Shown piece after piece: positions 1 through 20,866 of a DNA stretch of 53,358 nucleotides. Location: positions 4,137,241-4,190,598 of the forward strand of contig NC_068995.1 in assembly GCF_001194135.2 (NCBI RefSeq), given 5' to 3'. The position numbers were made by a program, and so were the translations under genes. This stretch comes from Octopus bimaculoides. Its lineage: Eukaryota. Each line of letters opens with the position of its first letter. The first letter of the stretch is position 1. The notes beneath the pieces were generated by a model. The model was not told where the DNA came from. It made no database searches and worked only from the letters and a program-made list of their open reading frames with translations.

Positions 1-38
<38 letters not shown>
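1..38. repeat. (TA)n microsatellite
   Basis: Direct reading; one of dozens of (TA)n/(CA)n/(GA)n tracts in the window. Confidence 0.95.
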
Positions 39-42
<4 letters not shown>

Positions 43-814
43 AGTGTGTGTGTATGTATACATGCATGTAAGCACCTGTATAACTGCACACTAAACCTGT
101 TTAGAAGTGTACGTGTGTCCGTATGTATAATCATACGTGTGTGGATTTGTGCTTTTAGGATATTTTCGTGTACGTCTGTATCACTATACAACAGTATCAC
201 TATTATTTATTCTACCTCTAGGTATTTTATATATACACGATGTTTATGTCTACTTTTGGAGTAATGCCAGTCGCTTAATTACGGTTGTAATGTCTATATA
301 GATTAGCATCTTTTTTTTTCAAAAAAAGTTTTTCTCGATATATTTTATTTTCTGTTATTATTTTTTATACATTATTTCAGAATGTAGGAAAGAAAACGTT
401 TCAATAAGTATGTTTGCTCTATAAAGAATCTTTAAAAAAAAATAACTTTAAACGAATTTTAAAAAAAATATGTTGATTTATGTTTCGCAAGAGGGTCGGG
501 ATTAATATTTCGTAAATGAAATATTCATGGTTATTATTATTGTTATTGTTGTTTTTGCTTATTTTTTTGATCTGGTACGAAGTAATGTTTGGAGCGGGGA
601 GGATTTCTGCTCGCGACATTATATTTTGTAATTAAATGAGGGGAATATTTGAAGAAAATTACAACTACGGAAAAAATGCCTTGCAGTATTTCTTGTGTCA
701 CTTTATATTTTGTGTTCAAATCCCGCCGAAATCAATTATTACTTTTATCCCCTCTAGAATTGATAAAATAAACTATCAACTTAAAACTAAGGTTCATAAT
801 AGCAGGCCGTGTTC

Positions 815-815
<1 letters not shown>

Positions 816-850
<35 letters not shown>

Positions 851-1345
851 GAGTGAGAGAGCAGCGCATGCCATCAAAGTGACACTGGGGTAAAATATAT
901 GAAGCCCAGTATACCGATCATGACTACCTGTCTGATAAGGGTACACCAGGCACATGCATAACAACCACATGTGCGCGACATGGTGATCTTATAGCGCATG
1001 ACCTTGCAGAGGGGACCAGTTAGAATTGTTTTCATGTTGAGTAGCCCATCCCACTCAGAAGCACCCATGTTTCCAGTTGTGTATTATTAAAAATTCCTCT
1101 CAACACATGGCTATGACGCTCCCCCACTACTTCTGCTCGTGATCAGAGATGCACATATCGTCATCCACCAAGGGACATGCTCAACTGGTTACGGTCAAAC
1201 AACTGACAAGCAAATCTGTGGTATTAAGCAGAATATTTGCTGTAGCCCATCTTTTATACCAAGGCAAAACAATGTACATGGTGACAGTTCCGATCAGTTA
1301 AGATCAGAAGCCATGTGAACTAGTACCTGGTATTACATCGGGGCC
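816..1345 (-). mobile_element. Interspersed repeat, probable 3' end of a non-LTR retroelement with an (AAT)n tail
   Basis: A GC-richer ~500 bp block ends on the minus strand in a clean (AAT)n run (plus-strand (TTA)n at 816-850). No ORF; family not assigned. Confidence 0.45.
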
Positions 1346-1784
1346 TTTATATTGCATCAGAGCATTTATGGTATTGCATCAGCGCTTTTATATTGCATTA
1401 TTGTTATCATTGTTGTTGATGTTGTTGATGTAGTTGTCGTGTGCTAAATTCGCTTTTCAACTTTGAATCTGAACTTCGGCTCCAAAGAGTCGAGGCTATA
1501 TACTGTAAAACGTTTGTTCAATAAATGTAACATTTGTACAGAATCACCATTGTATTTTGGGAAAAAGAAATATATTGATTTCTAACGAGAAAAGTAAGTC
1601 TGATCGAGTAAATCGATCTAATACTTGAATGATTCTTTGTTTTATCGAACTTCTCGACAGACAATATTTATGTCGCAGTTTCACATATGTATGACTACAA
1701 AATTATTTCGTTTGTAAACATCAGATTTTATACAGTAAAATATGTGCAAACTACATCTTTGTTGAATATGAGAGTGATACCTAA

Positions 1785-1985
1785 CATGATCACAAGACCA
1801 GAACATTTTAGGGAAGGGAGTTATCGATGAAACCGGCCTAATACTTGATTGACACTCTGTCATCTACCCGGGAAAGAGCAAAATGCAAATTTGACCTTAA
1901 GGGGATTTGAACTCAGAATGTAGAGATAGACTAAATACTGCAATTCATTTTACATTCAACTATTTCTGTTAATTTACCAACATTT
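1785..1985 (-). mobile_element. tRNA-derived SINE, family A (degenerate)
   Basis: Minus strand contains ttctgagttcaaatcccc (B-box-like) followed by aggtcaaatttgc; the tail matches other copies in the window. Confidence 0.6.
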
Positions 1986-2285
1986 TGTTAAATATAGTAA
2001 GAAACCGTCTGACAATATAATATAAAGTTTAATTATTTATAAAGCTATTTAAATGTATATTCCTGGAATTATTACTTATGAGTTGGGGATAAGACAGTTG
2101 TTTGTTTGTTCGAAGAGATATTTAAAAAAATTTTCTGCTGTTGATGTTCTTGTTTTGCTGTTAGCATATTATGGAATGTTTCATCAATTAAAATTTCAAA
2201 AGCTTAAGGACAAAAGCACGTAGACTTGCCTGCATTGGATCGACCAGGGCTAATCACTGTGAAATTCATTTTGATGATGCAGTTT

Positions 2286-5200
2286 TCATCGCACTGGAAT
2301 TTCAACGTCTCTCAGATCAGTTTTATCACCATGATTGTCTTCTTTCGCTGTTGAACTCATTAATCTTTGAGAATTCTCAATGGCATCACCAGAATGTGAC
2401 AATGTGTCAGCATGTTTTTCGTACGGGTTCTCGATTTTTCCTTTATTAACTCGGACAGCGTTAATTTTTCCTTCTTTGAACTTATTTGAAGAGGGTTGTG
2501 ACGAAGATCTTCGCGATATCACTTTGGATGTGAGATCGGTTTTACTCGACCCTAGTGAAATCTGTTCTCCATAATCAGTTCTATTTGTGTCTTTAAAATT
2601 ATTAAAGCTATCACTTTTCATCGGTAAAGCATATAAAACATTTAACGGCATATGAAGACTTTTTTTAGATAATTTCTTAGAGGGCTTAACTGAATTTGAG
2701 GGATTATGGGCATTAGGCAACTCTATGACTAGGGACGATGGATCTTGAATTCCTAAATACCGTTTCACTAACATTGTATGGCTGAAGTTCCGTTTATGTA
2801 GAGAAATCGTATTAGAAGGTTTTGCTGCCGTACGTTTAAACTTTTGGCGCCTTTTAGCAGCAAACTTACGATTAGCAATTAAGTAATTCCTTCCCACAAT
2901 TCGTTTACCGACAAATAAGGGATCCTCATCTCGTTTAGCTGATAACAAGGTATATCGATTTCGTTCACTATCTACTAGGGGATATTTAATTGTTTTACTT
3001 ACAAAAGAAGGCCCTGAATATCGCTTAATCCCATGAAAAAAATTTGACCGCAAACGTGAAATTTTATCTGCTGAAGATTCATCTTCTTTTCTTCTAAAAA
3101 TAGGTTTATTTATAGTTACTGATTCTAACTCCCGTTTATCATTAGATACTTGCTGATCGCCTTTTAGAGAATTTTTATTGTGTGTAACTAAATTCATAAG
3201 GCGCAATTTTCGTTTGCTTACAAGACCAGGGTTGTACTTTGACTTACCATTAACATATTGGGAAAGTCTATTTCCAAACTGGGTCTCACTAAACCCTCCT
3301 TTACTGAGTAATTCTGTGACGTGCTCACGTTTGCCAACAAACAAAGAATCTTCCTCTCGTTTACCGACAAACATGGGATCTTCTCTTTTACCGACAAACA
3401 TAGGATCTTCTCTTTTACCGACAAACATAGGATCTTCTCTTTTACCGACAAACATGGGNNNNNNNNNNTTACCGACAAACATAGGATCTTCTCTTTTACC
3501 GACAAACATAGGATCTTCTCTTTTACCGACAAACATGGGATCTTCTCTTTTACCGACAAACATGGGATCATCTCTTTTACCAACAGACATAGGATCTCTT
3601 TTACCGACAAACATGGGATCTTCCCTTTTACCGACGAACATTGGATCTTCTCTTTTACCGACAAACATAGGATTTTCTCTTTTACCGACAAACATGGGAT
3701 CTCCTCTTTTACCGACAAACATAGGATCTTCTCTTTTACCGACAAACATAGGATCTTCTCTTTTACCGACAAACATGGGATCTTCTCTTTTACCGACAAA
3801 CATGGGGTTTTCTCTTTTACCGACAAACATGGCGTTTTCTCTTTTACCAACAAACATATGATCTTCTCTTTTACCAATGAACATAGGATCTTCTCTTTTA
3901 CCGACAAACATGGGGTCTTCCCTTTTACCGACAAACACAGGATCTTCCCTTTTACCTATAAACATGGGATCTTCTCTTTTACCGTCAAACATGGGGTCTC
4001 CTCTTTTACCGACAAACATGGGATCTTCTCTTTTACCGACAAACATGGGGTCTTCTCTTTTGCCAACAAACATAGGATCTTCTCTTTTACCAACAAACAT
4101 AGGATCTTCTCTTTTACCGATAAACATAGGATCTTCTCTTTTACCGACAAACATGGGGTCTTCTCTTTTACCGATGAACATGGGATCTTCTCTTTTACCA
4201 ACGAACATGGGGTCTTCTCTTTTACCGATGAACATGGGATCTTCTCTTTTACCAACAAACATAGGATCTTCTCTTTTACCGATAAACATAGGATCTTCTC
4301 TTTTACCAACGAACATGGGGTCTTCTCTTTTACCGACAAACATTGGATCTTCTCTTTTACCAACGAACATAGGATCTTCTTTTTTACCGATGAACATGGG
4401 ATCTTCTCTTTTACCAACGAACATTGGGTCTTCTCTTTTACCGATGAACATGGGATCTTCTCTTTTACCGACAAACATGGAATCTTCTCTTTTACCGATA
4501 AACATAGGATCTTCTCTTTTACCAACGAACATAGGGTCTTCTTTTTTACCGATGAACATGGGATCTTCTCTTTTACTGACAAACTTGGTATCTTCTCTTT
4601 TACCGATGAACATTGGATCTTCTCTTCTACCAACAAACATGGGGTCTTCTCTTTTACCGATGAACATAGGATATTCCCTCTTACCAACAAACATATGATC
4701 TTCCCTTTTACCGACAAACATGGGGCCTTGTCGTTTACCGATAAACATGGGATCTTCTCTTTTACCAACGAACATAGGATCTTCTCTTTTACCTATAAGC
4801 ATGGGATGTTCTCTTTTACCGACAAACATAGGATCCTCTCTTTTACCGACAAACATGGGATCTTCTCTTTTACCAAGAAACATAGGCTCTTTCTCTCGTT
4901 TACCAACAAACATAGGGTCCTCTCTTTTACCGATGAACATAGGATCTTCTCTTTTACCGACAAACATAGGGTCCTCTCTTTTACCGATGAACATAGGATC
5001 TTCTTTCTTACCGACAAACATAGGTTGTTCTCGTTTACCAACAAATCTAGGCTCTGTCTCTCGTTTACCCACAAACATGGGATCTCCTCTTTTACCGACA
5101 AACATGGGGTTTTCTCTTTTACCAACAAACGTGGGATCTTCCCCTCGTTTACCCACGAACATGGGATCTCGTTTACTGACAAATTTAGGGTCTTTTTCAT

Positions 5201-7126
5201 GTTTCCCGACATTCATAGGCTCTTTCTCTCGTTCATCAGCAAACATGGGATCTTTCTCTCGTTTGCCAACGAACACAGGATCTTCCTCTCGTTTACCGAC
5301 AAAGACCGGATCCTCCTCTCGTCTACCGATAAACATAGGATCTTCTCGTTTCCCGGCAAACATAAGTTCTTTCTCTCGTTTACCAATAAACATAGGGTTC
5401 TTCTCTCGTTTACCTACAAACATAGGATTCCTTTTACCGACAAACATAGGCTCTTTCCCTCGTTTACCGATAAACATTGGATCTTCTCGTTTACCAACAA
5501 ACATTGGATCTTCTCTTCTACCAAGAAACATTGGGTCTTCATCACGTTTACCTACAAACATGGGATCTTCCTCTCGTTTACCAACAAACATAGGACCATT
5601 TCCCCGTTTCCCGACAAACATAGGATCTTCTCGTTTACCGACAAACACAGGATCATCCTCTCGTTTACCAACAAACACAGGATCATCGTCTCGTTTACCA
5701 ACAAACATGGGATTTTCCTCACGTTTACCGACAAACATTGGATCCTCCTCTCTTTTACGACCAAATACAGTCTCTCTGGAAAATGGCGCAACGAAAGCTG
5801 AGGGAAATGATGCCGGCTTTTGTCTTCCCGTTAAAAGCGTATCGTTATTTCGGAAAGAACGAAATATTAGATCCGGATCATGTATATTAGTATATACAGA
5901 TCTTGAATTTCGCTTTCTGGGAAATAACGGATGATCGTTTTGTCGTTTGCCTGCCAATGCAGAATCATAATGAAATCGTTTGCTTATAATAATGGGACCA
6001 TCTGGTTTGTTTAAAAATGTGTGATCCCGATATTGTTTTCCTCCAAATAAGGGCTCACCATGGAATGGTTTACCTGTATATATTACATTATCATCGTATA
6101 TGGGATCGCCTGGCTTGTTTGATATGTCCTGGTCTAGATAATCATGTGTAGGTAACTGATTATTATAACCTCTTTTTCCTACAAATAAGGGGTTATCATC
6201 TCGTTTGCCTACAAAAAGAGGATCATCATCTCGTTTGCCTACAAATAAAGGATTTTCTAGTTTTTGCTCACGATAATTCTGTTTGCTTCTAAATAAGGGA
6301 ACTTGTGTACCTGCTAACAAGGGATTTTCCTCCGAACGTCGTTTGCTTACAAATAATCGATGGTGTGAATTCTCAACGGAGAGAGGGTATTCACTCTTTT
6401 TACCTACAAACATGGGGTCTGGATTTCGTTTACCAACAAAAAAGGGATCTGAATCTCGCTTACCAACAAAAAAGGGTTCTGCATTTCGTTTACCAACAAA
6501 AAAGGGGTCTGAATCTCGTTTGCCTACAAAAAAGGGGTCTGGATTTCGTTTACCAACAAAAAAGGGATCTGAATCTCGCTTACCAACAAAAAAGGGTTCT
6601 GAATTTCGTTTACCTACAAAAAAGGGGTCTGAATCTCGTTTGCCTACAAAAAAGGGGTCTGAATGTCGTTTACCTACAAAAAACGGATCTGGGTCTCGTT
6701 TACCAACAAAGAAAGGATCTGGATCTCGTTTACCAACAAAGAAAGGGTCTGGATCTCGTTTACCTACAGAAAAGGGGTCAGAATTTCTCTTCCTAACATA
6801 TAAAGTGTTTGGATCCCTTTTACCAATGAACATGGGGTCTGGATCTCGTTTACCGACAAATAAAGTGTCTGGATCCTTTTTACCTACAAAGAATAGATCT
6901 GGAACCCGTCTACCAACAAAGAAGTGGTCCCGACCCCGTTTTCCTACAAAAAAAGGATCTTGATCCCTTTTTCCCACCAAAAATGGATCTGGGTCCCGTT
7001 TTCCCACAAAAAAAGGATCTGGATCCCTTTTGCCTATAAACATGGGGTCTGGATCTCGTTTATCAACATATAAATGATGTTGGTCGTTCCGTTTACCTAA
7101 CAACATTGTGTCCGGATCCTGTTTAT
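2286..7126 (-). CDS. Exon C: PXFVamide (Mytilus inhibitory peptide-type) precursor cassette, ~116 repeat units of [DE]x(x)PxF(V/I)-G-KR
   Basis: The 4.8 kb ORF is uninterrupted apart from a 10-N gap and consists of KR-flanked, Gly-extended peptides (DPDPFFV, DDDPLFV, EDPMFV, EDPMFI). Acceptor ctccacactttctttgcag|AT (AG 7128-7127), phase 1. The PxFV-amide C-terminus is the established signature of molluscan MIP/PXFVamide peptides (e.g. GSPMFVamide). Confidence 0.95.
3330..5760 (-). repeat. 27/30-bp coding tandem repeat, PMFV block (~88 units, EDPMFVGKR type)
   Basis: Plus-strand unit ttaccgacaaacatgggatcttctctt (27 nt); mostly 30-nt variants in the 5' part of the exon (higher coordinates); gap at 3459-3468. 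Confidence 0.95.
6395..7120 (-). repeat. 30-bp coding tandem repeat, PFFV block (~24 units, DPDPFFVGKR type)
   Basis: Plus-strand unit such as gaatctcgtttgcctacaaaaaaggggtct, repeated in exact 30-nt register. Confidence 0.95.
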
Positions 7127-7711
7127 CTGCAAAGAAAGTGTGGAGAATTTTCTTATTAGCTGATTTCATACCATTACTTTCTTTATATTATCCTTAATTA
7201 ATCTAGAATATTTCATATTTTTGTTGATATTCTTGTAACTAATTATATTTGCCAACGTGAAACAGTAACGGAAAAATATTTATATCAACGGACCAGCTTC
7301 GACGAATGACAATGTTTTGGCTATTTTTCTTTTAAGTTCTGGCGCATTACATATTCCATTTCGTTTTATACCTTCAGCTTTTCATCGCACGCTTCGGGGA
7401 TTTTCGTTGAATCTTCATATTTTCGTCCCACTGCATTATTCACGAAACGTTGAGTAAAATTCTTTGTTGAAAACATTTTTTCTCAGATCTTTAGCCAGGA
7501 AAAAAAGTGGTTTCATATGTGTTACTGCGTAAAGCATTTAAGCATAATGCAATAGCTGATTCCCTGATGTAGACTCTGTAACCATTCTAATTGCTATGAT
7601 GGTAGGTACTTAAAGGCACTAAATAATCTGTGATATTAATTTTGATAGATATAATTTGACTCCCGTGATTATAACTTATGATATAGTATTGTCTATTACT
7701 TTGCACTTATG

Positions 7712-7717
7712 TTTATT
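7712..7717 (-). terminator. Candidate polyadenylation signal (AATAAA) between exon B and exon C
   Basis: Plus-strand tttatt at 7712-7717 is AATAAA on the minus strand, ~720 nt after the exon B stop and upstream of the exon C acceptor. The hexamer is common in AT-rich DNA. Confidence 0.3.
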
Positions 7718-8436
7718 GCACAAAAGAATATGTTCTTCGCTATTGTTTGAAATGCTTGTCAAGAAGTTCTATCATTTTTCCAGTATGTTTTGGTGATATT
7801 TCGAATGAGAAAATTGTGACAACTATACCTGTAAACACGAAAAGGATGAGATATTCCATCACCCAAGACATCTGCGCAAGTATAGTATTAAGGTTCACCA
7901 AATGGATTGTAAATTGGAATATTAAAAGCCTTTTGTACGAAGCCAATCCATTTAAAACAGGGTTTGTTTTTTCTTTAAAAGGACAAATTCAGAAAAAAAT
8001 TGAATAAATTTGAAATTGCTATCTTGAGTCAAAGATCGCTGAAATGAATTGTGGAACGAATTTGGATATTGAATCCTATTAGCTAAGAATCTATCCTAAG
8101 AGCTACCTGCCAGCAGATTTAATTTGATGTTATTGGACATTCCTGAAACATTATTACCATTTGATCCACTTGTGTGAAGCATTTCAGTTACACCATTTAA
8201 CGTTGTTTGGAACGATTGTCACTTACCATTATTGAAACTTCCCCATATCCTGATGCCATTCAGATATTTCCAACGAAAAAAGGAGAGCAATAGTTTACCT
8301 TTTTCTTTCTAGATGACATTTTAAATGCTCAGACTATAAATTAAATCGCTAGTAATTTTCTGCAAGAAATGGTTTTCCCGCGTGTTTTTCTATCTATATC
8401 AGGAATATTAGCGAATCTCTAGTGTACACTCCAATT

Positions 8437-9218
8437 TCACTTACCGATTAATACAAAATATTTACCTTTACGTCTGAAAGTATTCCAAATTTTAAGATCA
8501 AGCAGTTTAGCTAAGGTTTCAGTAGCATTGTGCCAAATTCTCGGGTCCAACATTTCCAAATTATTCTTACCTAAAAATTCCATTGGACGCTTATCAAAGT
8601 AATCCAATTTTCTTTTCCCCAAAAATTCCATGGGGCGCTTTCCTAGGAATTCCATACCTCTTTTTCCAAGGAACTCCATTGGACGTTTACCTAAAAATTC
8701 CATTGATCGTTTTCCAAGAAATTCCATTGGTCTTTTCCCTAAGAATTCCATACGCCTTTTTCCCAAGAATTCCATCCGTCTTTTACCCAAGAATTCCATT
8801 CTTCTTTTATCATCTAAATCATCTGCTCTCTTTCCCAAGAATTCCATGGGACGTTTTCCCAAAAATTCCATAGGGCGTTTACCCAAAAATTCCATCGGTC
8901 TTTTTCCTAAGAATTCCATTGGTCTTTTTCCTAAGAATTCCATCGGTCTTTTACCAAGGAATTCCATCGGCCGTTTACCAAGAAATTCCATTGGTCTTTT
9001 ACCGAGAAATTCCATCGGCCTCTTTTCAAGACCTTCATCTTCGTCATCAGTATAGGCAATGAAAGGATCATTCATTACCGATTCATCTGGTAGCGCTACT
9101 TCACCGTTATCTTGCGTATGACCACTAGGGATGTTCAAATAGGAACTGCCTACAAGTGGCTTCATAACTGTGTCCTTCACTGCGTTTTTGACAGACTCTG
9201 AATCAGCGGCATTGTAAT
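8437..9218 (-). CDS. Exon B: EFLamide (xMEFLamide, TRH-type) precursor cassette, 17 copies (12 PMEFL, 3 RMEFL, 1 SMEFL, 1 GMEFL)
   Basis: The ORF has tandem KR-xMEFL-G-KR units (dibasic cleavage plus Gly amide donor) after an acidic pro-region. Acceptor ttgtgtttctttgtatttctag|AT (AG 9220-9219), phase 1; joining to exon A recreates GAT (Asp). The 3' end is ambiguous: stop at 8439-8437, or phase-1 donors after 8466 (G|GTAAAT) or 8445 (G|GTAAGT). Confidence 0.92.
8567..9026 (-). repeat. 24-bp coding tandem repeat (KRPMEFLG)
   Basis: About 19 in-register 24-nt units: 17 peptide copies plus 2 acidic same-length units, with synonymous variation at third positions. Confidence 0.95.
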
Positions 9219-10569
9219 CTAGAAATACAAAGAAACACAACAAATCAACGCAAGACATTCACACTACACCATGAATACCAGAGAAAACAGCAGCACCCAC
9301 AGCATCAGTATCGGGGGCAACAGCAGCAGAAAGACCAAAAATAGTAACCAATCATACAAAACTTAGCAAAACCTTAAACATTCTCTCCTCCATTTTATCT
9401 TCCATTCTACATATCCTCTCTGTACGCGCACGCGCCCGTGTGTGTGTTTATGTTTGTAATGTAAGTTTGTGTCTAACAGATTCCTCGAAAACAATCTGAC
9501 TAAAATGTCCAGTTAAAACATGGCGATGTAAAAATCAATAACTTCCATAAATGTTTGTCTGAAGATACGGATGTTCATTAGATCTGCTTGAAGCTACAAG
9601 TTTGGTTTTCGGTTGAACGAATTAAATTACTTATATCTAGCCCATGCTACTCACTACCTTTCTACTTTTCTCCCGTTCGTTAGTATACTTATATACATGT
9701 GTNNNNNNNNNNNNNNNNNNNNNNNNNNNNNNNNNNNNNNNNNNNNNNNNNNNNNNNNNNNNNNNNNNNNNNNNNNNNNNNNNNNNNNNNNNNNNNNNNN
9801 NNNNNNNNNNNNNNNNNNNNNNNNNNNNNNNNNNNNNNNNNNNNNNNNNNNNNNNNNNNNNNNNNNNNNNNNNNNNNNNNNNNNNNNNNNNNNNNNNNNN
9901 NNNNNNNNNNNNNNNNNNNNNNNNNNNNNNNNNNNNNNNNNNNNNNNNNNNNNNNNNNNNNNNNNNNNNNNNNNNNNNNNNNNNNNNNNNNNNNNNNNNN
10001 NNNNNNNNNNNNNNNNNNNNNNNNNNNNNNNNNNNNNNNNNNNNNNNNNNNNNNNNNNNNNNNNNNNNNNNNNNNNNNNNNNNNNNNNNNNNNNNNNNNN
10101 NNNNNNNNNNNNNNNNNNNNNNNNNNNNNNNNNNNNNNNNNNNNNNNNNNNNNNNNNNNNNNNNNNNNNNNNNNNNNNNNNNNNNNNNNNNNNNNNNNNN
10201 NNNNNNNNNNNNNNNNNNNNNNNNNNNNNNNNNNNNNNNNNNNNNNNNNNNNNNNNNNNNNNNNNNNNNNNNNNNNNNNNNNNNNNNNNNNNNNNNNNNN
10301 NNNNNNNNNNNNNNNNNNNNNNNNNNNNNNNNNNNNNNNNNNNNNNNNNNNNNNNNNNNNNNNNNNNNNNNNNNNNNNNNNNNNNNNNNNNNNNNNNNNN
10401 NNNNNNNNNNNNNNNNNNNNNNNNNNNNNNNNNNNNNNNNNNNNNNNNNNNNNNNNNNNNNNNNNNNNNNNNNNNNNNNNNNNNNNNNNNNNNNNNNNNN
10501 NNNNNNNNNNNNNNNNNNNNNNNNNNNNNNNNNNNNNNNNNNNNNNNNNNNNNNNNNNNNNNNNNNNNN

Positions 10570-10610
<41 letters not shown>

Positions 10611-11087
10611 TTGTCTTTGTACGTGTCTTTGTGCATGTGCTTCTGTCTGACTATACATGATTTATTTGTAGGTTTGGAAGCCAATCAATTGTTTCGCGTG
10701 AAGGGAACTTCAAGGTTCATCAAGCGTATCACATGGAAGTTTCAATATTTTGTTTTGCTACGAGTAAGTGCAGAGGCTGTAGTGTTGTAATTTCGGTCGT
10801 ATCTCGAAATATCACATCTATCTCACACTCGTACACACACAAAACAGCTATCATATTCTCACATATGAGCAACGGTTCATATATATGTGTGTGAACACAC
10901 ACATACAAACACACTCACACACACACATTAATTGTGGGTGTAGAAAACAACCAATGGTTTCATGCGAAGAGATCATTGCACTTCTTCACGCGTGCCACAT
11001 AGAATGTAATGGTAGTCATCAGCAAATGTTGCTTGTTACGCCACAATGTAAGCTTACATAAATATATATATATATATNNNNNNNNNN

Positions 11088-11141
<54 letters not shown>

Positions 11142-11190
11142 ATTAAAGAACCAAATGAGAGCTGACAGAGAATTGCTTGAAATTACATAC
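9219..11190 (-). other. Intron between exon A and exon B (GT...AG, phase 1), containing an 867-N gap
   Basis: GTATGT at 11190 and tttctag at 9219; phase-compatible; contains microsatellites and the gap at 9703-10569. Confidence 0.7.
11088..11138. repeat. (GA)n microsatellite in the A-B intron
   Basis: Direct reading. Confidence 0.95.
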
Positions 11191-11272
11191 CGATGAGATG
11201 CCCATTCTTAACCTGTCCCCAAACTGAGGCAGATAGAATTACCACAATGTACACAGACAAGTAGATCCTCAT
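11191..11272 (-). CDS. Exon A (first coding exon): signal peptide of the neuropeptide precursor, MRIYLSVYIVVILSASVWG/QVKNGHLI + 1 nt
   Basis: ATG at 11272-11270. Basic n-region (MR), hydrophobic core (IYLSVYIVVILSA), small-residue end (SVWG). Strong donor ATC G|GTATGT (intron starts 11190), phase 1, matching the phase-1 acceptors of both downstream peptide exons. 82 coding nt = 27 codons + 1. Confidence 0.82.
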
Positions 11273-11300
11273 TTCTAATGTAATTTGCTGCTTGAAGCTT
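11273..11300 (-). other. 5'UTR part of exon A, preceded by a splice acceptor
   Basis: Minus strand reads ttgtctttgttttcttttattgcag|AAGCTTC (AG at 11302-11301): long polypyrimidine tract plus CAG, 28 nt before the ATG. This implies an upstream non-coding exon. Confidence 0.7.
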
Positions 11301-11587
11301 CTGCAATAAAAGAAAACAAAGACAAGGTAAGTAAATTTATCAATTTCTCTATAATGTATATATATACTAGAGTATACTACTCGTGACTCTTGGGTCACTG
11401 ACAGTTCAAGTTATAAAACATTGCAGCTGATTTCATGATTAAGGTTTTATCGATTGTTTATCTGGAATGTCTTTCTTGTTCCACCTGGAACGTAAATGAA
11501 AATCAAAGCAGATGTGTTCCTCTCTAATCTGTTACGAATGAAGTCGTACATATATTTTTGCTCACGATTCAATAGAGAGTCTCTCTT

Positions 11588-11796
11588 CTACAAATCGTCG
11601 CTGCTCATCTCTGCGGCAATATTATTTGGCGTTGGTAAGTTAAAGTGAGTAATTCTTTTGCCCAGGTCATTAAGTTCGTCTTCAAAATACGGAGGATATC
11701 GATAATAATTTCTTTCGCTAATCAAAAGACTAAAGTTTTTTTCCCTTTCAGGGTTATGTTTCTTTCGGAATATTTTCCCAATTCGCAACGGTTTGG
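11588..11796 (-). CDS. Possible terminal coding exon of an unidentified upstream gene (xKPLRIGKIFRKK...YFEDELNDLGKRITHF...SSDDL*)
   Basis: Acceptor ctgcttgtctgtaatttaatacag|CC (AG 11798-11797), phase 1; 69-codon open, non-repetitive frame with GK, RKK and LGKR motifs. No upstream partner exon was found. Confidence 0.3.
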
Positions 11797-13103
11797 CTGT
11801 ATTAAATTACAGACAAGCAGACACGCAAGCAAGCAATCACAAAATTTTAGTTGTATGTATGTATGTATGTATGTATGTATGTATNNNNNNNNNNNNNNNN
11901 NNNNNNNNNNNNNNNNNNNNNNNNNNNNNNNNNNNNNNNNNNNNNNNNNNNNNNNNNNNNNNNNNNNNNNNNNNNNNNNNNNNNNNNNNNNNNNNNNNNN
12001 NNNNNNNNNNNNNNNNNNNNNNNNNNNNNNNNNNNNNNNNNNNNNNNNNNNNNNNNNNNNNNNNNNNNNNNNNNNNNNNNNNNNNTTCGATTAAAACTCT
12101 TCAAGGTGGTACTCCAATATGGCTGCCATCTAATGTTTGAAACAAGTAAATGATACCCTGAAGGAAAATAACATCTTTGTTCAAGGTGAGAAGTGAACTT
12201 AGAACATAAAGGGTTATATTTAAAAACCACTTGATATTTTGTCCGCCGTTCAAAGCCATTTCCATTTCCCAACCGCATCTCCTGGTTTGGAAGACGGTTT
12301 TCTCGAAATTGTCCAATTATGGTTTATTTCATAATACAAGCTTAATTTGTATTTTATAAGTAGCCGGAAATTCCTTTTCAAAATCGACTAAAAAATAAAT
12401 AAAAATGAAACAAAAAAAAATTGAGAGAAATATCAAAAAGATTTTGATTTAAGAAAATATTTTTCTCTCAATGAAAAAACTTCAATTTTTTTTTTATTTC
12501 AAAAATAAAACAATTTAACAATAGAACGATTAACAGATAATATTCAGATTAAACATCGAACTAAAGAGATATTCCAGTAAATCTATAATGCCCCTTAATC
12601 ATTTTCAATTCAATGTAATAATTCTAAGTTAAGCGTCTATTTAAACTAAAACCCGTTAATCCTCTAATCTCATCTCAGGACTATAATCCTACATTATTGA
12701 AGAAATCTCTGTCTCACAGAAGTCTTAATTGAGCTCATGTTATTTTCATTCATTTATTCATTTAGTTTTTGGTTTATTTTTATTGTCCTTTTGTTAGTTT
12801 TCTTTAATAATCAGGTTCGATTCATTTATTTAGTTATACAATTCTACCAATTTTTTTTTATTAACTCATATATAGACCAGTGTATGTGCTTACGTGTGCG
12901 CAAGCGCACGCAAACTCAAGCACAACCACCGCCACTGCCACACATACAGTTGTTTGATTTATCTTCGTTCCGGCTCAACTTAGAGCTCGAATGATTTGCT
13001 TTTCAGAAAAGTACAGAAATCACTTGTTTACACAGAAACGTTCACATTTATACACACCTATATTATTAAGGATAAAGAGCCTTATTCGAGTTATATAGAC
13101 TTT

Positions 13104-20640: not shown

Positions 20641-20866
20641 CATCAAATATGAGAGGAACAAAACACCCATGTTTCCAAAGGTGAATTATCCAAACGTATG
20701 TATATATATATTGATAGATACATATCTATCGATAAACGTAATTGGAGTAGCTTCCAAGAATGCGCTGTATATGCAAATTAGGTAATCCAATTTATTTAAG
20801 CCTTGTGAAATATTTTGACAATGGGTTGCTAAGCGTAGAGTGTCAAATAAGTCTACTCACTCAATG

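What the first reader, a model, noticed from the sequence alone, without database searches (positions are those of the whole stretch)
2286..11300. One signal-peptide exon can feed two different neuropeptide cassettes (EFLamide/TRH-type and PXFVamide/MIP-type)
Seen: neither large peptide ORF has a signal peptide, and both begin right after a polypyrimidine-AG acceptor in phase 1 (ag|AT at 9218 and 7126). A short upstream exon (ATG 11272) encodes a typical signal peptide and ends in a phase-1 donor (G|GTATGT). Exon B also has two phase-1 donors at its end. Every join recreates GAT (Asp) in frame: A-B gives ~287 aa (EFLamide only), A-C ~1640 aa (PXFVamide only), A-B-C ~1891-1898 aa (both). Known: shared-leader alternative splicing of peptide cassettes occurs in the Lymnaea FMRFamide gene, insect orcokinin A/B and mammalian calcitonin/CGRP. 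I also recall that annelid (Platynereis) FVamide and EFLGamide are linked as splice forms; this needs checking and, if right, the arrangement would be ancient in spiralians rather than new. Inference: a splicing switch lets neurons release a TRH-type peptide, a muscle-inhibitory MIP-type peptide, or both.
Basis: partly seen in the sequence, partly recalled or inferred. Interest (0 to 1): 0.92.

Follow-up and report, generated by a model that had tools for sequence, protein, structure and literature searches.

The report
Shared-leader gene for two neuropeptide cassettes
One gene uses a single signal-peptide exon and then splices in either an EFLamide (TRH-type) exon or a very large PXFVamide (Mytilus-inhibitory-peptide-type) exon; RNA data confirm this, but the same design is already known in oysters, snails and annelids.

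Summary
The core observation holds and RNA supports it. Exon A (11303-11191, ATG at 11272, signal peptide, phase-1 donor) is joined to exon B (acceptor 9218, 17 xMEFLG copies) or to exon C (acceptor 7126, at least 107 PxFV/I-Gly copies). Both joints appear in public RNA runs, and usage differs strongly between samples.

Three details are wrong.
- The donor used by exon B is TTAG|GTAAGA at 8571, not 8466 or 8445.
- Exon C is not a terminal exon. It has a GC-AG donor at 2230, 56 nt after its stop.
- Both exons splice on to the same downstream exon, which begins GTTAAAATAACACAC and lies outside the window.

B and C are therefore alternative internal cassettes. The main EFLamide precursor is 244 aa and ends PMEFLG, with the stop codon made at the junction. 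The 287-aa read-through form is minor, seen in one run. No B-to-C joint was found in 14 runs (12 RNA), so the combined precursor is unsupported.

The arrangement is not new. It is published for the Crassostrea gigas MIP/fulicin gene and for annelid FVa/EFLGa genes. I rebuilt it from three gastropod loci with the same phase-1 leader exon. What differs here is the cassette order (EFL before PXFV) and the shared 3' exon. This is a new member of a known kind.

The parts
11191..11303 (-). Exon A: 31 nt of 5' UTR, then ATG at 11272 and 82 coding nt. It encodes the signal peptide MRIYLSVYIVVILSASVWG and then QVKNGHLI. Acceptor cag|AAGCTT at 11303, donor ATCG|GTATGT at 11191, phase 1.
   Evidence: Sequence. 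RNA contigs and 157 raw reads cover exactly 11191-11303 and leave the genome at both ends. The upstream exon (AGAAGAAAAGTTTTGCAAAGAGCCACAGTT|) is not in the window.
9219..11190 (-). Intron between A and B. It contains the N gaps 9703-10569 and 11078-11087 and TC/TA microsatellites.
   Evidence: Skipped by the 11191>9218 joint (CT..AC on the + strand, i.e. GT..AG).
8571..9218 (-). Exon B, the EFLamide cassette: 648 nt, phase 1 in and phase 1 out. It holds 17 copies of xMEFLG (12 PMEFLG, 3 RMEFLG, 1 SMEFLG, 1 GMEFLG), flanked by KR except the last copy, which ends at the exon's 3' end. Donor TTAG|GTAAGA.
   Evidence: Raw-read depth falls to 0 below 8561. All reads carry the exon D letters from 8570 on. 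Single contigs A-B-D appear in X25 and X31.
7426..8570 (-). Optional 3' extension of exon B, when the 8571 donor is read through.
   Evidence: X16 has one 1173-nt contig over 7426-8598 at depth 176.8, against 1057.7 for exon B and under 3 on the far side. In other runs this stretch sits at background level.
2230..7126 (-). Exon C, the PXFVamide cassette: 4897 nt as assembled, phase 1 acceptor, stop TGA at 2288-2286, then 56 nt of UTR and a GC-AG donor GCAG|GCAAGT at 2230|2229. It holds at least 107 short Gly-ended peptides (51 xMFV, 20 xMFI, 15 xFFV, 5 xLFV, 5 xVFV and others). EDPMFVG occurs 31 times and EDPMFIG 16 times.
   Evidence: The 11191>7126 joint is. High-depth contigs end at 2229 and continue TTAAAATAACACACATACACACACAGA in X25, X13, X16, X31.
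3459..3468 (.). Assembly gap of 10 N inside the 27-nt repeat array of exon C.
   Evidence: Not bridged by RNA or DNA contigs. The frame is kept for 10 nt or for 10 nt plus any multiple of 27.
7127..8570 (-). Intron between B and C, 1444 nt and gap-free. This fixes the order and orientation of B and C within one assembled contig.
   Evidence: The DNA run X15 covers 6632-9300 in one 3087-nt contig with no differences.

Best explanation
This is one neuropeptide gene on the minus strand. A constitutive exon A supplies the start codon, the signal peptide and eight further residues, and ends in phase 1. The spliceosome then includes one of two internal phase-1 cassette exons.

- Exon B (648 nt) gives a 244-aa precursor with 17 xMEFL-Gly units.
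- Exon C (about 4.9 kb) gives a precursor of at least 1640 aa with more than 100 PxFV/I-Gly units.
- Both cassettes are spliced on to the same downstream exon D, which starts GTTAAAATAAC and lies outside the window.
- In the B form, the stop codon is created at the junction (G|GT TAA). The last PMEFLG therefore ends the protein and can be amidated directly.
- In the C form, the stop lies 56 nt before the junction.

Inferred from standard prohormone processing: cleavage at KR, removal of the basic residues and amidation of the C-terminal Gly would release PMEFLamide (fulicin/EFLamide/TRH-type) or EDPMFV/Iamide and DPFFVamide (Mytilus-inhibitory-peptide type).

Inclusion differs sharply between samples, so the choice is regulated. 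Cell-type regulation is likely but inferred. The gene is the counterpart of the MIP/fulicin (FVa/EFLGa) gene of other molluscs and annelids.
For: - Sequence and frames.
- A>B joint in X1, X13, X2, X25, X16, X31 and in raw reads (18 in X34, 88 in X35). A>C joint in X3, X13, X2, X18.
- B>D: raw-read depth is 0 below 8561. Every read differs from the genome at 8568 and carries at least one further difference. Contigs continue ...CACACATACACACACAGA.
- C>D: the same 27 letters follow 2229 in four runs.
- DNA control X15 has the assembly sequence through both donors, even depth of about 11 and no joints. The joined forms therefore exist only in RNA.
- Shared 5' exon: the same upstream letters occur in X1, X2, X13, X25, X35. 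In X13 the exon A contig depth of 85.9 is close to 52.2 (A>B) plus 27.7 (A>C).
- Sample-specific use.
- Homology: exon C best matches 'MIP-related peptides-like' of Gigantopelta (E 1.8e-59). Exon B matches gastropod and oyster fulicin-type precursors.
- Same architecture rebuilt exactly (NCBI product lengths 1025/255, 486/487 and 467) from three gastropod loci, each with a phase-1 leader exon.
- Published for the oyster and annelids (PMC8398477, PMC3890597).
Against: - Exon D and the 5' UTR exon are not in the window. Their genomic position, and therefore strict cis-splicing in the order A-B-C-D, is inferred.
- The A>C joint rests on assembled contigs from four independent runs, not on raw reads. 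The raw-read runs barely express exon C.
- Sample identities are coded, so 'cell-type or tissue switch' is an inference from between-run differences.
- No peptide or receptor data are available.
- Contigs drop rare variants, so a low-level A-B-C form cannot be excluded.
Confidence: 0.85

Rival explanations
1. A single combined precursor (A-B-C) carries both peptide families, so the same neurons release both.
For: With the real donor at 8571, B>C would stay in frame and give 1856 aa. The 1444-nt B-C intron is a normal size.
Against: No joint from 8571, 8466 or 8445 to 7126 appears in any of the 12 RNA runs and 2 further runs. Where both forms are abundant (X2, X13), the contig at the C acceptor runs only into exon A. 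In X13, X25 and X31 the exon B contig runs unbranched into exon D.
Confidence: 0.04
2. There are two overlapping transcription units with separate promoters, so promoter choice rather than splicing regulation decides which cassette is used.
For: The 5' exon lies outside the window. A minor alternative upstream exon was seen (4 of 93 reads at 11302 in X35). In the C-only runs the upstream exon could not be read.
Against: Both forms contain the identical exon A. A single unbranched contig joins exon A to the same upstream letters in runs expressing both forms. Its depth in X13 equals the sum of the two forms.
Confidence: 0.08
3. The break at 8571 and 2230 is a genomic difference between the assembly and the sequenced animals (a structural variant or misassembly), not splicing.
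For: After the junction, 9 of the first 10 letters of exon D (GTTAAAATAA) resemble the intron start (GTAAGAATAA). This first looked like a point difference.
Against: The DNA run X15 matches the assembly through both sites without joints. Low-depth unspliced contigs with the assembly sequence coexist with the high-depth joined form in the same RNA runs. The same foreign letters follow two sites 6.3 kb apart, each exactly at a consensus donor.
Confidence: 0.02
4. Exon B is mainly a terminal exon with its own polyadenylation site, as in calcitonin/CGRP, and encodes the 287-aa product.
For: X16 shows read-through from exon B down to about 7426 at roughly 17% of exon B depth.
Against: In raw reads from X34 and X35 depth is zero beyond 8561. 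In X2 and X25 the read-through is about 0.1% of exon B depth. No poly(A) tail was observed.
Confidence: 0.1

Closest known systems
Crassostrea gigas MIP/fulicin gene LOC105328755 (PMC8398477, Fig. 3)
   Same: One gene and one leader. Alternative splicing gives either Mytilus-inhibitory-peptide (PxFV/Iamide) precursors or a fulicin (xEFLamide-type) precursor. Peptides from the fulicin precursor were detected by mass spectrometry.
   Different: In the oyster the MIP cassette comes first, and the fulicin sequence sits out of frame in the 3' UTR of the MIP transcript. Its isoforms arise by an alternative 3' splice site or by exon skipping. Here the EFL cassette comes first. The two cassettes were never seen together, and both join a common 3' exon.
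Annelid FVa/EFLGa precursor genes (Platynereis dumerilii, PMC3890597; Capitella teleta, cited there and in PMC8398477)
   Same: FVamide and EFLG-type peptide regions sit in one locus. EFLGa-positive cells are a subset of the FVa-positive cells.
   Different: In Platynereis the EFLGa region follows the FVa stop codon on the same mRNA. No spliced EFLGa transcript was found, and stop-codon read-through was proposed. Here clean alternative splicing gives each cassette the signal peptide. Annelid peptides end in Gly-amide (EFLGa); here the prediction is EFL-amide.
Gastropod loci: Babylonia areolata LOC143299843 (L006) and its paralogue (L008); Gigantopelta aegis MIP-related gene (L007)
   Same: Each has a leader exon ending in phase 1 after the signal peptide and two phase-1 cassette exons. 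The EFL exon starts with AT, so the junction codon is G|AT = Asp, as here. NCBI already annotates both products from one start in the two Babylonia loci.
   Different: The order is PXFV then EFL in all three loci. Peptides are xYEFLamide, FNEFVamide and NPMFVamide. Whether they share a 3' exon was not tested.
Hemipteran and locust Prohormone-4/EFLa gene (PMC7294237)
   Same: An EFLamide exon is reached by alternative splicing from the leader exons of another prohormone.
   Different: The partner is Proh-4, not PXFVamide, and that paper judges it an insect-specific novelty. It carries a single EFLa copy.
Lymnaea FMRFamide gene and vertebrate calcitonin/CGRP (from general knowledge, not tested here)
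   Same: A shared signal-peptide exon is spliced to alternative peptide-coding exons in different cells.
   Different: Calcitonin/CGRP uses alternative terminal exons and poly(A) sites. Here the main forms share the 3' exon. The peptide families are unrelated.

Membership tests
Spiralian MIP/fulicin (FVa/EFLGa) two-cassette neuropeptide gene | A single signal-peptide leader exon is used by both products | tested here: met
   RNA joints 11191>9218 and 11191>7126.
Spiralian MIP/fulicin (FVa/EFLGa) two-cassette neuropeptide gene | A cassette of repeated PxFV/I-Gly units between dibasic sites | tested here: met
   At least 107 units in exon C. The best database match is 'MIP-related peptides-like', E 1.8e-59.
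Spiralian MIP/fulicin (FVa/EFLGa) two-cassette neuropeptide gene | A cassette of repeated x-E-F-L/V-Gly units (fulicin/EFLamide type) | tested here: met
   17 xMEFLG units. Matches gastropod FNEFVG/YEFLG and oyster YSEFLG precursors.
Spiralian MIP/fulicin (FVa/EFLGa) two-cassette neuropeptide gene | Leader exon ends in phase 1 and both cassette exons are entered in phase 1 | tested here: met
   Window. Three gastropod loci rebuilt to the annotated product lengths.
Spiralian MIP/fulicin (FVa/EFLGa) two-cassette neuropeptide gene | Cassette order PXFV upstream of EFL, as in the oyster, annelids and three gastropod loci | tested here: not met
   Here the EFL exon (9218-8571) lies upstream of the PXFV exon (7126-2230) on one gap-free stretch. 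I treat order as a variable trait rather than a defining one, but it is the clearest difference.
TRH-type (EFLamide/EFLGa) neuropeptide signalling | The peptide activates an orthologue of the TRH receptor | not testable with these tools
   Known only for Platynereis EFLGa (as cited in PMC8398477 and PMC7294237).
TRH-type (EFLamide/EFLGa) neuropeptide signalling | C-terminal E-[L/F]-[L/F/V]-amide core signature | tested here: met
   MEFL-Gly followed by KR or stop. The signature is as stated in PMC8398477.
Mytilus inhibitory peptides | Inhibitory action on muscle | not testable with these tools
   Functional property; only sequence was examined.
Mutually exclusive exons selected by competing RNA pairing (Dscam-type docking and selector sites) | Complementary intronic sequences between a docking site and a site next to each alternative exon | tested here: inconclusive
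   The inverted-repeat search of 1-11400 found only TA microsatellites. Part of intron 1 is an 867-N gap and the C-D intron is outside the window.
Alternative terminal exon / poly(A) choice (calcitonin/CGRP type) | Each peptide exon ends its own transcript | tested here: not met
   Both cassettes splice on to the same exon D. Only a minor read-through of exon B in X16 resembles this type.

The most novel reading that the evidence does not exclude
In this lineage the ancestral PXFV-then-EFL gene was rearranged into EFL-then-PXFV. It was also converted from 'skip the first cassette or stop in it' into two strictly mutually exclusive internal exons flanked by common 5' and 3' exons. An in-frame combined product is possible (1856 aa) and the intervening intron is of normal size. 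Its absence would then imply a still unknown active mechanism that enforces exclusion and switches neurons between a TRH-type and an inhibitory peptide.
Probability: 0.3. Interest if true: 0.5.

Novelty: new member of a known kind. Interest (0 to 1): 0.3.

Why it matters
The result gives a corrected, RNA-backed gene model for a large neuropeptide gene. It includes the true EFLamide precursor (244 aa, with the stop codon built at a splice junction) and a PXFVamide precursor with more than 100 copies.

It shows that the shared-leader MIP/fulicin design extends to this genome, and that the phase-1 leader exon is conserved with gastropods.

This supports alternative splicing as the general way EFL-type peptides obtain a signal peptide. 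The Platynereis study left that point open and tentatively explained it by stop-codon read-through.

The reversed cassette order and the shared 3' exon are modest evolutionary curiosities. Exon-specific probes designed from these coordinates would let the two peptide populations be mapped separately. A probe against the common exons would confound them.

Tried and rejected
- Searched the window for exon D (TAGAATAACAC... and variants) and for the 5' UTR exon, with mismatches allowed. Neither is present.
- Tried to fetch transcripts or genomic flanks for the 244-aa and 287-aa products with the look-up of encoding contigs.
- Tried to identify the organism of contig L001 through the run index.
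- Looked for PacBio or Nanopore runs to get full-length isoforms and to cross the array gap. None is served.
- Pfam scan of both products gave only repeat artefacts (PWWP_KDM3B, NUDIX-like, with no passing stretches). I disregard these.
- Rfam scan of 1-12000 found nothing.
- Inverted-repeat search for docking and selector pairing found only TA microsatellites.
- Protein searches returned no near-identical proteins, so I could not check whether the source genome's public annotation already lists these isoforms.
- The Ostrea edulis isoform P0023 could not be located on a contig.
- The nemertean Tubulanus EFLG gene (L005) has its signal peptide and EFLG repeats in one exon and no FV cassette within 56 kb. 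The linkage is therefore not universal in spiralians.
- Literature searches for cephalopod descriptions of this gene structure, or for peptide names such as PMEFLamide and DPMFVamide, found nothing relevant.
- The organism of the window was not identified by any tool. Runs are coded 'organism A'.

Full report
**What is in the sequence**

The gene lies on the minus strand.
- Exon A holds an ATG at 11272 and encodes MRIYLSVYIVVILSASVWGQVKNGHLI. This has a charged start, a hydrophobic core and a small-residue VWG|Q site, so it reads as a typical signal peptide. I judged this by eye; no predictor was available.
- Exon A ends after 82 coding nt at ATCG|GTATGT (11191), in phase 1.
- Two open frames without a start or leader follow pyrimidine-rich acceptors: ttctag|AT at 9218 and ttgcag|AT at 7126. 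Both are phase 1.
- The first frame carries 17 xMEFLG units. The second carries at least 107 short Gly-ended units, mostly xPMFV, xPMFI and xPFFV, between dibasic sites.
- Tandem Repeats Finder gives arrays of 24 nt x 18.7, 30 nt x 22 and 27 nt x 88.

**RNA evidence for the joints**

Public runs of the same organism (coded A) were laid on the window.
- The joint 11191>9218 appears in contig runs X1, X13, X2, X25, X16 and X31, and in raw reads (18 in X34, 88 in X35).
- The joint 11191>7126 appears in X3, X13, X2 and X18.
- Exon A itself begins at an acceptor at 11303. It is preceded by the same upstream letters in X1, X2, X13, X25 and X35.
- In X13, which expresses both forms, the exon A contig is unbranched. 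Its depth of 85.9 is close to the sum of the two joints (52.2 + 27.7).
- That upstream exon is not in the window.

**Corrections to the gene model**

Exon B does not end at 8466 or 8445.
- In raw reads, depth is zero below 8561. Every read differs from the genome at 8568 and has at least one more difference.
- Contigs continue with CACACATACACACACAGA.
- The explanation is a consensus donor TTAG|GTAAGA at 8571|8570, spliced to an exon that begins GTTAAAATAACACAC.

Exon C is not terminal either.
- In four runs its high-depth contigs stop at 2229 and continue with the same letters, TTAAAATAACACACATACACACACAGA.
- They leave at GCAG|GCAAGT, a GC-AG donor 56 nt after the TGA at 2288-2286.

The DNA control supports splicing.
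- Run X15 has even depth of about 11.
- It has single contigs identical to the assembly across 6632-9300 and 2100-3389, with no joints.
- The joined forms therefore exist only as RNA.

The resulting model follows.
- B and C are alternative internal cassettes between common exon A and common exon D.
- Exon D is not in the window.
- The main EFLamide precursor is 244 aa. Its stop codon is made at the junction (G|GT TAA), so the protein ends in PMEFLG.

**Other isoforms**

- No joint from exon B into exon C was found in any of the 12 RNA runs or the 2 further runs. This holds even where both forms are abundant. The in-frame 1856-aa combined product is therefore unsupported, although assembled contigs can hide rare forms.
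- In one cDNA run (X16), the stretch 7426-8598 is covered at 176.8 against 1057.7 for exon B, and under 3 beyond it. This points to a minor form that reads through the donor and ends near 7426.
- Elsewhere this stretch is at background level.

**Regulation**

- X3, X7 and X18 contain the PXFV exon but no EFL exon.
- X1 contains the EFL exon, with the PXFV exon only at background.
- X2, X25 and X31 have EFL far above PXFV. X13 has both.
- With a shared leader and shared 5' exon, this fits a regulated splicing choice.
- The sample identities are coded, so tissue or cell-type specificity is an inference.
- A search for complementary intronic elements that could enforce exclusion found only TA microsatellites. 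Parts of the introns are gaps or lie outside the window.

**Assembly gaps**

- The 867-N and 10-N gaps at 9703-10569 and 11078-11087 lie in the A-B intron. Spliced RNA bridges them.
- The 10-N gap at 3459-3468 is inside the 27-nt array and was not bridged.
- The written 10 N happen to equal the 10 nt needed to continue the unit in frame. Any number of whole missing units also keeps the frame. Copy number is therefore a minimum.

**Comparison with what is known**

Published cases:
- The oyster paper PMC8398477 describes gene LOC105328755. It makes long and short Mytilus-inhibitory-peptide precursors and a fulicin precursor by alternative splicing, and cites the same arrangement for Capitella.
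- Conzelmann et al. (PMC3890597) describe the Platynereis FVa mRNA. An EFLGa region follows the stop codon, no spliced form was found, and read-through was proposed.

Loci fetched here:
- Babylonia areolata L006 has a leader exon ending in phase 1, a PXFV exon (NCBI product 1025 aa) and a fulicin exon (255 aa). I rebuilt both exactly.
- A second Babylonia locus, L008, gives 486 and 487 aa from one start.
- Gigantopelta L007 has the 467-aa MIP product. An unannotated EFL cassette lies 456 nt downstream, with an in-phase acceptor.
- In all of these, the PXFV cassette comes first and the EFL exon starts with AT (junction Asp), as here.
- A Logan contig of unknown origin (L001) also has PXFV followed by MEFLGKR.
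- A nemertean EFLG gene has no FV cassette.

In the window the order is reversed, on a gap-free stretch.

**Literature on cephalopods**

I found no paper describing this structure in a cephalopod. A PRQFVamide homologue of Octopus bimaculoides has been cloned and used for in situ hybridisation. No tool named the window's organism.

**Verdict**

The feature is real and well supported. The combined precursor is unsupported. The arrangement belongs to a known, ancient spiralian gene type. I rate it a new member of that kind, with a reversed cassette order and a shared terminal exon as its own traits.

Noticed in passing
window 2230-2288: The stop codon of the PXFVamide exon lies 56 nt upstream of an exon-exon junction, and the donor is GC rather than GT (GCAG|GCAAGT). 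That distance is borderline for junction-dependent mRNA surveillance.
   Followed up: partly
window 7426-8570: In cDNA run X16 this stretch is covered at about 17% of exon B depth and stops abruptly near 7426. This suggests a minor read-through form with its own 3' end.
   Followed up: partly
window 11302-11303: In X35, 4 of 93 reads leaving exon A upstream carry different letters (TTTCAAAGTTTACAACAGTTGAACTCTTTT on the + strand). This could be a minor alternative 5' exon.
   Followed up: no
window 8466, 7030, 3143, 7639, 8265, 9065: Single-base differences recur between runs. 8466 C>T changes Gly to Ser in the read-through tail only. 3143 T>C is present even in the DNA run, so the assembly base may be a minority allele or an error.
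   Followed up: no
window 778-1332 and 1888-1998: RNA contig depth reaches thousands to tens of thousands, with many unrelated loose ends. This looks like a dispersed repeat copy (a (TTA)n tract at about 815-850 flanks it). It gave no Rfam match.
   Followed up: partly
window 11400-53358: No convincing long open reading frame. The DNA is very AT-rich and dense in TA, CA and TC microsatellites, with 14 further N gaps. The 5' UTR exon of the gene was not found here.
   Followed up: partly
L006 and L008 (Babylonia areolata, two chromosomes): Two paralogous loci both keep the leader + PXFV + fulicin design. Their signal peptides are alike (13 of 24 identical). This points to duplication of the whole two-cassette gene in this snail lineage.
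   Followed up: partly
L007 20764-21429 (Gigantopelta aegis): An EFL-type cassette (14 YPEFV/IGKR units) lies 456 nt after the annotated MIP-related gene. An in-phase acceptor at 20797 would give a 232-aa product from the same leader. No such product was listed for the locus.
   Followed up: partly
L005 10001-45880 (Tubulanus polymorphus): The annotated isoform X1 joins an EFLG-repeat exon, which has its own signal peptide, to a prokineticin-like cysteine-rich C-terminus 36 kb away. This may be a second case of an EFL exon sharing a gene with another secreted product, or an annotation fusion.
   Followed up: no
L001 2-568 and 1785-2351 (Logan contig, organism unknown): One transcript contig carries the end of a PXFV array, a stop, 1.2 kb of spacer and then a MEFLGKR cassette without a leader. 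This is the same layout as the oyster and Platynereis transcripts.
   Followed up: partly
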